A stretch of DNA of 64,000 nt from Selaginella moellendorffii. Taxonomy: Eukaryota > Plantae > Lycopodiophyta. The position numbers and the translations under genes were made by a program. Below, piece after piece: positions 11,695 to 13,587 of the stretch. The first letter of the stretch is position 1. Every line of letters starts with the position of its first letter. Location: positions 2,746,414 to 2,810,413 of the forward strand of contig NW_003314266.1 in NCBI RefSeq assembly GCF_000143415.4. Reading direction: 5' to 3'. The notes beneath the pieces are model-generated. The model made no database searches. It saw only the letters and a list, made by a program, of their open reading frames with translations, and had not been told where the DNA came from.

Positions 11695-13587
11695 ATGGAA
11701 TTCGCTTCCCGGTTTCTCCTCATTTCGTGCCTCATTGCTGTAGCTTCATTCTGTTTTGCAGCTGCAGGTCGCTGTCACTCTCACTGCTATTGCTTGCCTC
11801 CCCAACGATGCTTCCCATCTCCTCCAGTTTGGCATTCTTTCAGCAAGGACATTGGTGGTCGACTGATCCAAGCAAGGTAAAGAGTCCTCTTCAACATTCT
11901 GATTCACTGGAAACACACGCTTCGTTTCTCCTTTCTCTTCCAGGCCAGCTGCGTATCCGTGCCACGATCCACACTATGACGAAGCAGCCTGCAAAGTTGC
12001 CAAAACAAAGTGGACTGATGCACTGTGGAGGTCGGACCAAGTTGGCGCTTCTCAGCATCCCCAGTGGGACTCGTTCAAGCAGCAAAAGTGCCTTATCAAC
12101 TCTAACGACACTTGCTACCAGGGTGCTGTTCCAATTTATGCCGTGGATGTGCGCCAGGCCGATGACGTGTCCAAGGCATTTGCTTTTGCCACTAAGCACC
12201 ACATCCGTGTGATTGTCAAGAACACTGGCCACGACTACCTTGGACGCAGTGACGGGAGAGGCGCTCTCAGCATCTGGACTCACAACCTCAAGACGATCGA
12301 TTTCTCGGACAACTTCGAACGATTCCAGTGTCCATTCGACAGCAAAGACGGCCAAGTGTCGGCTGTGACTGTGGGAGCTGGCGTCCAGTTTGGAGAACTG
12401 TACAAGGCTGTTGCTGCGCAAAACAAAATCGTCATTGGTGCCTTCAGTGCGAGGTAAGTTATCTCTCTTGAATTTCTCTTGATGATCCAACTTGAGCTTT
12501 TGACCCTCCCAGTGTTGGTGCTGCGGGAGGATACGTCGGAGGTGGCGGACACAGCGTTCTTGCGCCAACTTATGGCCTCCCAGCCGACAACATCCTCGAG
12601 ATCAACGTGGTGACACCTGATGGAAGCTACTTCGTGGCCAACGAGTGCCAGAACAAGGATCTCTTCTGGGCTCTCCGGGGTGGCGGCCCGGCAACGTTTG
12701 GCGTGGTTCTCAGCGTCACTTACAGGACACACCCGGCACCGGCAGCTGTCACCAACGTCCACCACGAGGTCTCAGCCAACGATTCTTCCAGCCTGAGGGA
12801 CTTCATCGCCGAGTACGCCAGGCTCATGCCATCCATCGCAGACAAGGGATATGGAGGAAGCTTTGTCGCCCTTCCCAATGCCGGTCACTTGAACTACGTT
12901 CTCCCTGGAGGCAACCAGAGCGCAGCACAGCAGGACTGGCAGCCACTGGTGGACTTCGCGGCCAGCCACCCCGGGCTCAAGGTGCTCCAGAGAGTCACCA
13001 TGTTTCCAAACTTCTATGCCTTCTTCAACGCCACCCTGTGCAACAGGTTTAAAACGCAGTGCACGGACCTGACGGGAACCAACGAGATCCTGGCCAGCAG
13101 GCTTCTTCCCAGGTCGCTGTTTGTCAACTCCCCGGACGCCATCGCCGACGCCTACATGGACATCCTCACCAGGAACTCGAGCAACGGCGCCAGGAACTTC
13201 ATCCTCACCATGAGCGTTGGTGGTGGAGCTGGAGCTCTGGGTGACGAGCACAGTGCTGCGCTGAATCCTGCGTGGAGGAAGGCCCTGTGGCACACTATCA
13301 TCCAGGCCGTGTGGGACGACGATGCAAGCGGCGATGTGATCCAGCACAAGTTTGTGGACATCACGAATGCGAACCAGGTGTTTAGAGACTTGGCACCGGA
13401 GTCTGGGAGCTACATGAACGAGGCCGATTACAACGAGCCGGATTGGCAGACGTCGTTCTTCGGTGAGCACTACGAGAGGCTTGGCGAGATCAAGGCGCAG
13501 GTTGATCCCCATGACGTGCTGGCGTGCCGCAACTGCGTTGGAAGCGAGGCATGGGACACTGATTTCTTCTGTAGGAAAGATCACTAA
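11695..13587 (+). CDS. Secreted FAD-linked oxidoreductase, VAO/BBE-like, fungal type (exons 11695-11876, 11944-12453, 12513-13587)
   Basis: Signal peptide; CYCLPPQRCFPS..W; VKNTGHDYLGRS (covalent-FAD His); ALSIWTHNL; VGAAGGYVGGGGHS; DLFWALRGGG; YMNEAD..EPDWQ..FFG.HY.RL..IK..VDP; CVGSEAW. Confidence 0.92.

What the first reader, a model, noticed from the sequence alone, without database searches (positions are those of the whole stretch)
11695..13587. Fungal-type FAD oxidase in a plant genome: horizontal transfer candidate
Seen: Cys-rich N-terminus CYCLPPQRCFPS..W..F...IGGRL...P.A.PC....YD..AC, then KNTGHDYLGRS.G.GALSIWTHNL and C-terminal CVGSEAW. Known: these signatures typify fungal secreted BBE-like oxidases (isoamyl alcohol oxidase/ZEB1-like). 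Seed-plant BBEs instead have RSGGHDYEG and a second flavinylating Cys (G.C.TVG), which here reads AFSASVG. The gene has host-like short introns and plant neighbours, which argues against contamination. Inference: a fungus-derived, monocovalent flavoenzyme used in lycophyte specialised metabolism or defence.
Basis: partly seen in the sequence, partly recalled or inferred. Interest (0 to 1): 0.72.

Follow-up and report, generated by a model that had tools for sequence, protein, structure and literature searches.

The report
Fungal-type flavin oxidase gene in Selaginella
An intact three-exon gene in the spikemoss Selaginella encodes a secreted flavin oxidase of a type otherwise centred on fungi; it belongs to a gene family that among plants was found only in Selaginella and ferns, most likely acquired from an early-diverging fungus, and this copy has since picked up two plant-style introns.

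Summary
Window 11695-13587 (+) is an intact gene of three exons with GT..AG introns of 67 and 59 nt. It encodes a 588-aa protein with a signal peptide and Pfam FAD_binding_4 and BBE domains.

- **Closest solved structures:** the fungal oxidases MtVAO615 and MtVAO713 (E 5e-43; model TM 0.89-0.91). Seed-plant BBE enzymes match far more weakly.
- **Active site:** the flavin-linking His, gatekeeper Val, His and Glu of that subclass are kept. The second flavin-linking Cys is Ser, as in MtVAO713, so one covalent link is predicted.
- **Host:** Selaginella moellendorffii. The gene lies among PPR and DUF604 genes on both haplotype scaffolds and has host-like composition. It is not contamination.
- **Distribution:** a word search and an exhaustive profile search found plant relatives only in Selaginella (at least 15 loci) and ferns.
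- **Trees:** the plants form one clade (93/85), joined at 96/97 to Calcarisporiella, Basidiobolus, Mortierellomycotina and rotifers. The rival "all fungi exclude plants" is only borderline (AU p 0.05).
- **Introns:** the three plant paralogues checked and the one fungal relative checked are intronless, so this copy's introns are gains.

The scan already reached the same transfer reading for paralogues elsewhere in this genome.

The parts
11695..11876 (+). Exon 1 (60 codons plus 2 bases). Holds the start ATG, a hydrophobic signal-peptide-like N-terminus of about 25 aa, and the Cys-rich motif CYCLPPQRCFP..W.
   Evidence: The motif aligns with the N-terminus of MtVAO615/713 and of the paralogues. 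The signal peptide was judged by eye.
11877..11943 (+). Intron 1, 67 nt, GTAAAG..CCAG, phase 2, 43% GC.
   Evidence: The frame shifts and a stop lies in the read-through. The protein alignment to intronless paralogues is continuous across the junction. The splice sites are identical in the other haplotype.
11944..12453 (+). Exon 2: first part of the FAD_binding_4 domain. The His for the 8-alpha-N1-histidyl FAD link is codon CAC 12230-12232. The Ser at the MtVAO615 Cys222 position is codon AGT 12446-12448.
12454..12512 (+). Intron 2, 59 nt, GTAAGT..CCCAG, phase 2. The GenBank model uses the alternative pair 12438-12496.
12513..13587 (+). Exon 3: end of the FAD domain, the substrate domain, the BBE domain (about 13408-13521) and stop TAA 13585-13587. 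Gatekeeper Val is codon GTT 12514-12516. The His237 equivalent lies in GGGGHS. The Glu519 equivalent is codon GAG 13420-13422.

Best explanation
This is a functional-looking nuclear gene of Selaginella moellendorffii for a secreted, probably N-glycosylated and disulfide-rich VAO/PCMH-type flavoprotein oxidase of the MtVAO615/MtVAO713 subclass.

Likely mechanism (inferred from the solved fungal relatives): FAD is tethered by a single 8-alpha-N1-histidyl bond to the His of KNTGHDY. There is no 6-S-cysteinyl bond, because Ser replaces the Cys. A Glu, rather than the usual BBE-family Tyr, sits at the catalytic-base position. A small Val gatekeeper lets O2 reoxidise the flavin. The enzyme would therefore oxidise an alcohol, most likely a bulky or hydrophobic secondary alcohol, and release H2O2. 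The substrate is unknown.

Evolution: the gene belongs to a family of at least 15 loci in Selaginella that is shared with ferns and was found in no other plant group. The family most likely entered an early vascular plant from an early-diverging fungus, near today's Calcarisporiella, Basidiobolus and Mortierellomycotina. It then duplicated before lycophytes and ferns split, and was lost in seed plants. The three plant paralogues and the one fungal relative whose genes could be checked are intronless, so this copy gained its two short introns after the transfer.
For: Gene and fold:
- Intact three-exon ORF; Pfam FAD_binding_4 and BBE above cut-off.
- PDB by sequence: MtVAO615 scores E 5e-43 (exon 3) and 5e-25 (exon 2). 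Seed-plant BBE enzymes score about 1e-13 to 1e-15 for exon 3; exon 2 matches only the grass pollen allergen Phl p 4, at about 1e-3.
- AlphaFold model of GenBank's own model of this locus: pLDDT 94, TM 0.89-0.91 to 6f72 and 6f74. The next best hit is E 4e-30, against 1e-50.

Residues:
- His157, Tyr159, Val225, His237 and Glu519 of MtVAO615 are all matched. Cys222 is Ser, equal to Ser231 of monocovalent MtVAO713 (PMC6017366).

Host integration:
- PPR, PPR-DYW, DUF604 and BAHD neighbours.
- The second haplotype scaffold is collinear at 97.8% over window 3910-13675. Its allele is intact with the same splice sites.
- GC3 is like that of the neighbours.
- Between alleles there are 13 synonymous and 11 non-synonymous codon differences. 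By my hand estimate omega is about 0.27, which indicates constraint.

Distribution:
- The best 120 hits of a plant-profile word search name only Selaginella, Ceratopteris and Adiantum among plants.
- An exhaustive HMMER search of 1.84 billion representatives was combined with a FastTree of 203 rows. The plant clade holds only Selaginella and fern proteins plus three unnamed sequences that sit among the ferns.

Phylogeny:
- Careful tree, 67 rows, LG+C20 PMSF, rooted on bacteria.
- Plants form one clade at 93/85.
- Plants plus Calcarisporiella, Basidiobolus, Mortierellomycotina and rotifers: 96/97.
- Umbelopsis/Mucorales, Basidiomycota, Ascomycota and chytrids fall outside; all eukaryotes 96/88.
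- Selaginella monophyly is rejected (AU p 0.025), so ferns nest among the Selaginella paralogues.

Introns:
- Paralogues P0145 and P0011, fern P0122 and fungal P0003 are uninterrupted ORFs.
Against: - The rival topology, with all fungal and animal sequences as one clade excluding plants, costs only 16.2 lnL units. AU p is 0.049 in a two-tree test and 0.051 in a three-tree test; KH is 0.065. Nesting among fungi is favoured, not proven.
- Plant monophyly has 93/85 support, below the star threshold.
- Sampling was drawn from the best hits to plant queries.
- There is no expression or splicing evidence. The 90% cluster of this protein holds only two GenBank models and no RefSeq XP entry.
- Exon 3 differs between alleles by 6 non-synonymous and 2 synonymous changes.
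- The substrate and activity are entirely inferred. Even MtVAO713 has only a trace activity on ricinoleic acid, and MtVAO615 has no known substrate (PMC6017366).
Confidence: 0.68

Rival explanations
1. Vertical inheritance. The family is an old eukaryotic (or old plant) gene, kept in fungi, lycophytes and ferns and lost independently in algae, bryophytes, seed plants and most other eukaryotes.
For: The constrained tree with all fungal and animal sequences in one clade excluding plants is not clearly rejected (AU p 0.049-0.051, KH 0.065). The plants form a single clade.
Against: The best tree nests plants several nodes inside fungal diversity (96/97; the same order appears in the 203-row tree). 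No algal, bryophyte or seed-plant member was found by word search or exhaustive search. This reading needs many independent losses. The only other non-fungal eukaryotes carrying the family are bdelloid rotifers and a tardigrade.
Confidence: 0.12
2. Reverse or other direction of transfer. An early vascular plant donated the gene to the Mortierellomycotina/Calcarisporiella/Basidiobolus lineage, or plants acquired it from bacteria independently of fungi.
For: Plants are sister to, not inside, the Calcarisporiella/Basidiobolus/Mortierellomycotina/rotifer group (88/89). Bacterial full-length relatives exist and share the N-terminal Cys motif.
Against: Umbelopsis/Mucorales, Basidiomycota, Ascomycota and chytrids branch below the plant-plus-fungus clade. 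The family was therefore already fungal before that node. The bacteria form a separate clade (100/100) on a long branch (1.12), at only 30-34% identity.
Confidence: 0.07
3. Decaying or silent copy. The ORF is intact, but the gene is no longer expressed or useful: a young pseudogene among many paralogues.
For: No RNA evidence could be obtained. There is no RefSeq protein in its cluster. It sits on a long terminal branch (0.83). Exon 3 shows 6 non-synonymous against 2 synonymous allelic differences. A truncated chimeric relative exists on the other scaffold.
Against: Both alleles keep 588 codons open, with identical splice sites and all catalytic-signature residues. Overall allelic change is biased towards synonymous sites (13 against 11, omega about 0.27).
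Confidence: 0.1
4. Contamination or assembly artefact: a fungal fragment misassembled into the plant scaffold.
For: The best non-plant hits are fungal.
Against: The gene is flanked on both sides by plant genes in one contiguous window. The same arrangement occurs on a second haplotype scaffold at 97.8% identity. Introns and composition are plant-like. It is only 40-44% identical to any fungal protein.
Confidence: 0.01

Closest known systems
MtVAO615 and MtVAO713 of Myceliophthora thermophila (PDB 6f72, 6f73, 6f74; Ferrari et al. 2018, PMC6017366)
   Same: Full-length homology, including the N-terminal Cys-rich extension and the C-terminal CVGSE.W tail. TM is 0.89-0.91. The subclass-specific active-site set is shared: His157, Val225 gatekeeper, His237, and Glu519 in place of the usual Tyr. 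Ser at the Cys222 position matches monocovalent MtVAO713. Both are secreted.
   Different: Only 28-31% identity. The host is a plant, not an ascomycete. Substrate-pocket residues were not compared in detail. The gene here has two introns.
Fungal secondary-alcohol oxidases of the same clade: Hpm9 (hypothemycin), ecdysteroid-22-oxidase of Nomuraea rileyi, and isoamyl alcohol oxidase/ZEB1-type enzymes
   Same: PMC6017366 names Hpm9 and ecdysteroid-22-oxidase as close relatives of MtVAO713. RefSeq names Selaginella paralogues 'ARB_02478' and 'hmp9' after such fungal proteins. The expected chemistry is alcohol to carbonyl plus H2O2.
   Different: No sequence of these enzymes was compared here.
Canonical plant BBE-like enzymes (EcBBE, AtBBE-like 15/28, THCA synthase, Phl p 4, PpBBE1)
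   Same: Same VAO/PCMH fold, the same Pfam domain pair, and histidyl-FAD.
   Different: By sequence they match far more weakly than MtVAO615. For exon 3 the alignment covers only the first 70-110 residues (the end of the FAD domain) at E about 1e-13 to 1e-15. For exon 2 only Phl p 4 matches, at E about 1e-3. Identity is 16-21%. They lack the N-terminal Cys-rich extension and use Tyr where this subclass has Glu (PMC6017366). Most are bicovalent.
Documented fungus-to-early-land-plant gene transfers (Richards et al. 2009 Plant Cell, as summarised in PMC12448838; microbial-type terpene synthases of non-seed plants)
   Same: The same pattern: a gene of fungal type present in lycophytes and other non-seed plants, absent from seed plants, and integrated into the host genome.
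   Different: This enzyme family was not named in the papers I could read. Richards 2009 and Ma et al. 2022 were not held in the library, so prior listing cannot be excluded.

Membership tests
VAO/PCMH flavoproteins, BBE-like group | FAD_binding_4 (PF01565) domain followed by a C-terminal BBE (PF08031) domain | tested here: met
   36.8 bits (cut-off 26.4) and 43.2 bits (cut-off 20.6). The fold is confirmed.
VAO/PCMH flavoproteins, BBE-like group | Conserved His for the 8-alpha-N1-histidyl FAD linkage | tested here: met
   The His of KNTGHDY (codon 12230-12232) aligns with His157 of MtVAO615. It is invariant in 57 of 57 family members. The covalent bond itself cannot be tested here.
Bicovalent BBE-like enzymes | Cys for the 6-S-cysteinyl linkage (C-x-x-V-G) | tested here: not met
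   The position is Ser (codon 12446-12448), equal to Ser231 of monocovalent MtVAO713. With GenBank's alternative splice it would be Pro.
MtVAO615/MtVAO713 subclass of fungal-type secreted oxidases | Full-length similarity including the N-terminal Cys-rich extension | tested here: met
   E 5e-43 and 5e-25 for the exons; the paralogue aligns over residues 27-573. TM 0.89-0.91.
MtVAO615/MtVAO713 subclass of fungal-type secreted oxidases | Glu in place of the catalytic Tyr of other VAO-type oxidases, plus a small gatekeeper residue | tested here: met
   The Glu of MNEAD aligns with Glu519, and Val with Val225. The definition comes from PMC6017366, section 2.5.
MtVAO615/MtVAO713 subclass of fungal-type secreted oxidases | Oxidase activity: reduced flavin reacts fast with O2; an alcohol substrate is oxidised | not testable with these tools
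   Needs recombinant protein.
Horizontally acquired gene (fungus to plant) | Recipient sequences nested inside donor diversity with support | tested here: inconclusive
   The best tree gives 96/97 for plants plus a fungal subgroup, with other fungi outside. The same order appears with 203 rows. The AU test of the alternative gives p 0.049-0.051.
Horizontally acquired gene (fungus to plant) | Absence from the recipient's other relatives (algae, bryophytes, seed plants) | tested here: met
   only Selaginella and ferns in the plant clade. This is limited by which plant genomes have proteins in the databases.
Horizontally acquired gene (fungus to plant) | Stable integration in the host genome, not contamination | tested here: met
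   Plant neighbours, two collinear haplotypes, host-like GC3, spliceosomal introns.

The most novel reading that the evidence does not exclude
One ancient transfer from an early-diverging, possibly plant-associated, fungus into the ancestor of vascular plants seeded a family of secreted flavin oxidases. The family duplicated before lycophytes and ferns split, was lost in seed plants and expanded to at least 15 loci in Selaginella. Within it, this copy records the gain of two new spliceosomal introns in a horizontally acquired, originally intronless gene, while a sister subclade of Selaginella paralogues independently acquired the Cys needed for bicovalent FAD.
Probability: 0.4. Interest if true: 0.65.

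Novelty: new member of a known kind. Interest (0 to 1): 0.5.

Why it matters
Well-supported fungus-to-plant gene transfers are few, and most concern non-seed plants. This family would add an expanded, secreted H2O2-producing enzyme family to that list, with a donor group close to fungi known as early plant associates.

The enzyme subclass has no known physiological substrate even in fungi, so a plant expansion offers a second route to finding one.

This copy also gives a datable example of intron gain. All four relatives whose genes could be checked are intronless; this one has two typical short Selaginella introns that are conserved between haplotypes.

On the practical side, GenBank's model of the locus is partial and probably mis-spliced at intron 2.

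Tried and rejected
Tools and look-ups that gave nothing:
- Richards et al. 2009 could not be read by DOI or PMC id, and Ma et al. 2022 is not held. Five literature searches found no paper naming this family as a transfer.
- The look-up of encoding contigs had no record for P0012 and P0176 and no DNA for the fern P0122, although the gene span was given.
- Two 280-300 s scripts returned no answer.
- treekit's own AU test (full C20 mixture) did not finish. I ran IQ-TREE's AU test under the PMSF site frequencies instead.

Joined step left out: the spliced protein has no reference, so it was never typed or searched. Exons were searched one by one by reference. GenBank's own partial model P0174 served as the full-length stand-in for alignment, tree and fold. 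It is 100% identical in exons 1 and 3, differs in 5 residues at the intron-2 junction, and lacks 28 N-terminal and 10 C-terminal residues.

Ideas rejected:
- A second copy in the window: tblastn finds only one.
- Introns as copies of a repeated element: no other match in the window.
- A biosynthetic gene cluster: the neighbours are PPR, DUF604, kinase, formyl-transferase and GOGAT genes, with one BAHD fragment 3 kb away.

Full report
**1. Observation**

- An ATG at 11695 opens a 60-codon exon. It encodes a hydrophobic, signal-peptide-like start followed by CYCLPPQRCFP..W.
- The frame is broken at a GTAAAG donor (11877) and resumes after CCAG (11943).
- Exon 2 (11944-12453) carries KNTGHDYLGRS.
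- A second intron, GTAAGT..CCCAG (12454-12512), precedes exon 3 (12513-13587), which ends in CVGSEAWDTDFFCRKDH and a stop.
- The product is 588 aa.
- Pfam finds FAD_binding_4 in exon 2 and BBE at the C-terminus, both above the curated cut-offs.
- Only one copy lies in the window.

GenBank's partial model of this very locus (EFJ33770.1, P0174) is 100% identical in exons 1 and 3. It uses another GT..AG pair of equal length for intron 2 (12438-12496). It also restores a Gly that every other member of the plant alignment has; the one exception there is the allele's GenBank model, which uses the same alternative splice.

**2. Whose genome, and is the gene really in it**

The best hits name Selaginella moellendorffii.

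- Neighbours are plant genes: a PPR gene at 3966-5822, three tandem DUF604/Fringe-like genes at 6479-11374, PPR and PPR-DYW genes, and a BAHD fragment. Further on lie kinase, formyl-transferase and GOGAT pieces.
- The second haplotype scaffold (GL377639.1) is collinear with window 3910-13675 at 97.8% identity. It carries an intact allele (P0001) with identical splice sites.
- Between the alleles, 13 codons differ synonymously and 11 non-synonymously. With roughly three non-synonymous sites per synonymous site this gives omega near 0.27 (my hand estimate), which points to constraint. Exon 3 alone shows 6 non-synonymous against 2 synonymous changes.
- GC and GC3 match the neighbours.

Contamination is excluded.

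**3. What the protein is**

- By sequence, the exons match the solved fungal oxidases MtVAO615 (6f72) and MtVAO713 (6f74) at E 5e-43 and 8e-37 (exon 3), and 5e-25 and 8e-19 (exon 2).
- Seed-plant BBE enzymes match exon 3 only over its first 70-110 residues, the end of the FAD domain, at about 1e-13 to 1e-15. Exon 2 matches only the grass pollen allergen Phl p 4, at about 1e-3.
- An AlphaFold model of P0174 with a 57-sequence alignment has pLDDT 94. It superposes on 6f72 and 6f74 at TM 0.89-0.91. The next structure scores 20 orders of magnitude worse.

Ferrari et al. (PMC6017366) describe the two fungal enzymes as follows.

- MtVAO615 binds FAD bicovalently through His157 and Cys222.
- MtVAO713 binds it through His159 only, with Ser231 in place of the Cys.
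- Both have Glu (519/543) where other VAO-type oxidases have a catalytic Tyr.
- Both have a small gatekeeper residue (Val225/Pro234) that admits O2.
- Both react fast with O2.
- The only substrate found was ricinoleic acid, converted very slowly by MtVAO713.

In the window protein the residues align as follows.

| MtVAO615 residue | Window protein | Codon |
|---|---|---|
| His157 | His | 12230-12232 |
| Tyr159 | Tyr | next but one |
| Cys222 | Ser | 12446-12448 |
| Val225 | Val | 12514-12516 |
| His237 | His in GGGGHS | not located |
| Glu519 | Glu | 13420-13422 |

The best-supported mechanism is therefore a secreted, monocovalent histidyl-FAD oxidase that turns an alcohol into a carbonyl and makes H2O2. 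The fold and residues are shown. The chemistry, secretion and substrate are inferred.

**4. Relatives and distribution**

- A word search with exon 3 and a second with a profile of 11 plant members list, among plants, only S. moellendorffii, Ceratopteris richardii, Adiantum capillus-veneris and A. nelumboides. Selaginella has many paralogues at 38-45% identity.
- All other named hits are fungi: Calcarisporiella, Mortierellomycotina, Umbelopsis, Basidiobolus, chytrids, Basidiomycota and truffles. The exceptions are bdelloid rotifers and a tardigrade.
- The claim rests on absence, so I also ran the exhaustive HMMER search of 1.84 billion representatives with the plant profile. It gave 2081 hits at E 1e-30 or better.
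- A FastTree of its best 150 plus my labelled rows put only further Selaginella (P0183, P0267, P0285) and Ceratopteris (P0184) proteins into the plant clade.
- Three unnamed Logan sequences fall among the ferns. I could not learn their species.
- Bacterial genomes hold full-length relatives at 30-34% identity. Some share the N-terminal Cys motif.

**5. Phylogeny**

The careful tree used 67 rows and 590 columns under LG+C20+F+G4 by PMSF, rooted on distant bacterial oxidases. Support values are ultrafast bootstrap / SH-aLRT.

| Grouping | Support |
|---|---|
| All eukaryotes | 96/88 |
| Plants as one clade | 93/85 |
| Plants + Calcarisporiella + Basidiobolus + Mortierellomycotina + rotifers | 96/97 |
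| Window gene + paralogue P0145 | 95/93 |
| Ferns + Selaginella P0176 | 99/95 |

Umbelopsis/Mucorales, Basidiomycota, Ascomycota and chytrids branch outside the plant-plus-fungus clade. The window gene with P0145 forms the first plant branch. The quick 101-row tree and the 203-row tree give the same order.

AU tests under PMSF:

- Forcing all fungal and animal sequences into one clade that excludes plants costs 16.2 lnL units, with p 0.049 to 0.051. This is borderline.
- Forcing Selaginella to be monophyletic costs 14.6 units, with p 0.025. This is rejected.

At least two paralogue lineages therefore predate the lycophyte-fern split, or ferns took a copy from a lycophyte. Fungal origin is the best reading but is not proven.

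**6. Introns**

- The closest paralogue P0145, paralogue P0011, the fern gene P0122 and the closest fungal gene P0003 are single uninterrupted ORFs.
- The protein alignment runs without a gap across both junctions of the window gene. The two introns are therefore insertions into an ancestrally intronless gene.
- They are AT-richer than the exons (41-43% GC), are unique in the window and keep identical splice sites in the other haplotype.

**7. Comparison with what is known, and novelty**

- The enzyme class is known from the two fungal structures, but its physiological substrates are unknown.
- Fungus-to-non-seed-plant transfers are a known kind (review PMC12448838).
- I found no paper that names this family in Selaginella or ferns. 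The two most relevant surveys were not readable.
- The scan's own notes show that earlier agents reached the same reading for intronless paralogues elsewhere in this genome.
- What this locus adds is the intron-bearing, Ser-type, earliest-branching member and the haplotype comparison.
- I class it as a new member of a known kind.
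Noticed in passing
window 6479-11374 (+): Three tandem DUF604/Fringe-like genes lie directly upstream of the oxidase. Copies 2 and 3 are each split into two ORFs (8468-9277 with 9281-9856; 10038-10859 with 10892-11374), either by a stop or by an intron.
   Followed up: partly
other haplotype scaffold GL377639.1 (proteins P0002 and P0181, XP_024516149.1 'hmp9'); not in the window: An annotated chimera joins DUF604 fragments to a truncated oxidase C-terminal part that is 85% identical to exon 3. 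It looks like a degenerate duplicate of the DUF604-oxidase pair. The window has no equivalent.
   Followed up: partly
Selaginella paralogues P0011, P0025, P0030, P0034, P0053 (alignments A1, A2): These five paralogues carry Cys at the MtVAO615 Cys222 position (C-x-x-V-G). None of the sampled fungal relatives has it; there the position is Ser, Ala, Gly, Asp, Glu, Asn, Tyr, His or a gap. Bicovalent FAD binding may have arisen anew inside the plant family.
   Followed up: partly
proteins P0008, P0075, P0082, P0100, P0113, P0135, P0158, P0162 (bdelloid rotifers) and P0117, P0196, P0209 (tardigrade): Rotifer copies form one clade (100/100) next to Calcarisporiella and Basidiobolus. Tardigrade copies branch elsewhere, near chytrids. 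These look like separate transfers of the same family into animals.
   Followed up: partly
loci L004 and L009 (Gammaproteobacteria and Kofleriaceae MAGs): Bacterial full-length relatives (about 31-34% identity) share the N-terminal Cys motif C.PGQ.CWP..W, so this extension is not specific to eukaryotes.
   Followed up: no
window 14300-20700 against L085 12100-19000: Downstream of the oxidase the two haplotype scaffolds differ by rearrangements. There are several inverted and duplicated blocks at 83-96% identity around a PPR gene and the BAHD fragment.
   Followed up: no
window 11659-11672: A TATAAAT-like box lies only about 30 nt upstream of the start ATG. That would leave almost no 5' UTR if it is the promoter, so the transcription start is unknown.
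   Followed up: no
window 53895-56693 (-), 47983-50205 (-), 60947-62380 (+), 3966-5822 (-): Four long intronless PPR genes, one with a complete E/E+/DYW deaminase tail. This is typical of the editing-rich Selaginella genome.
   Followed up: no
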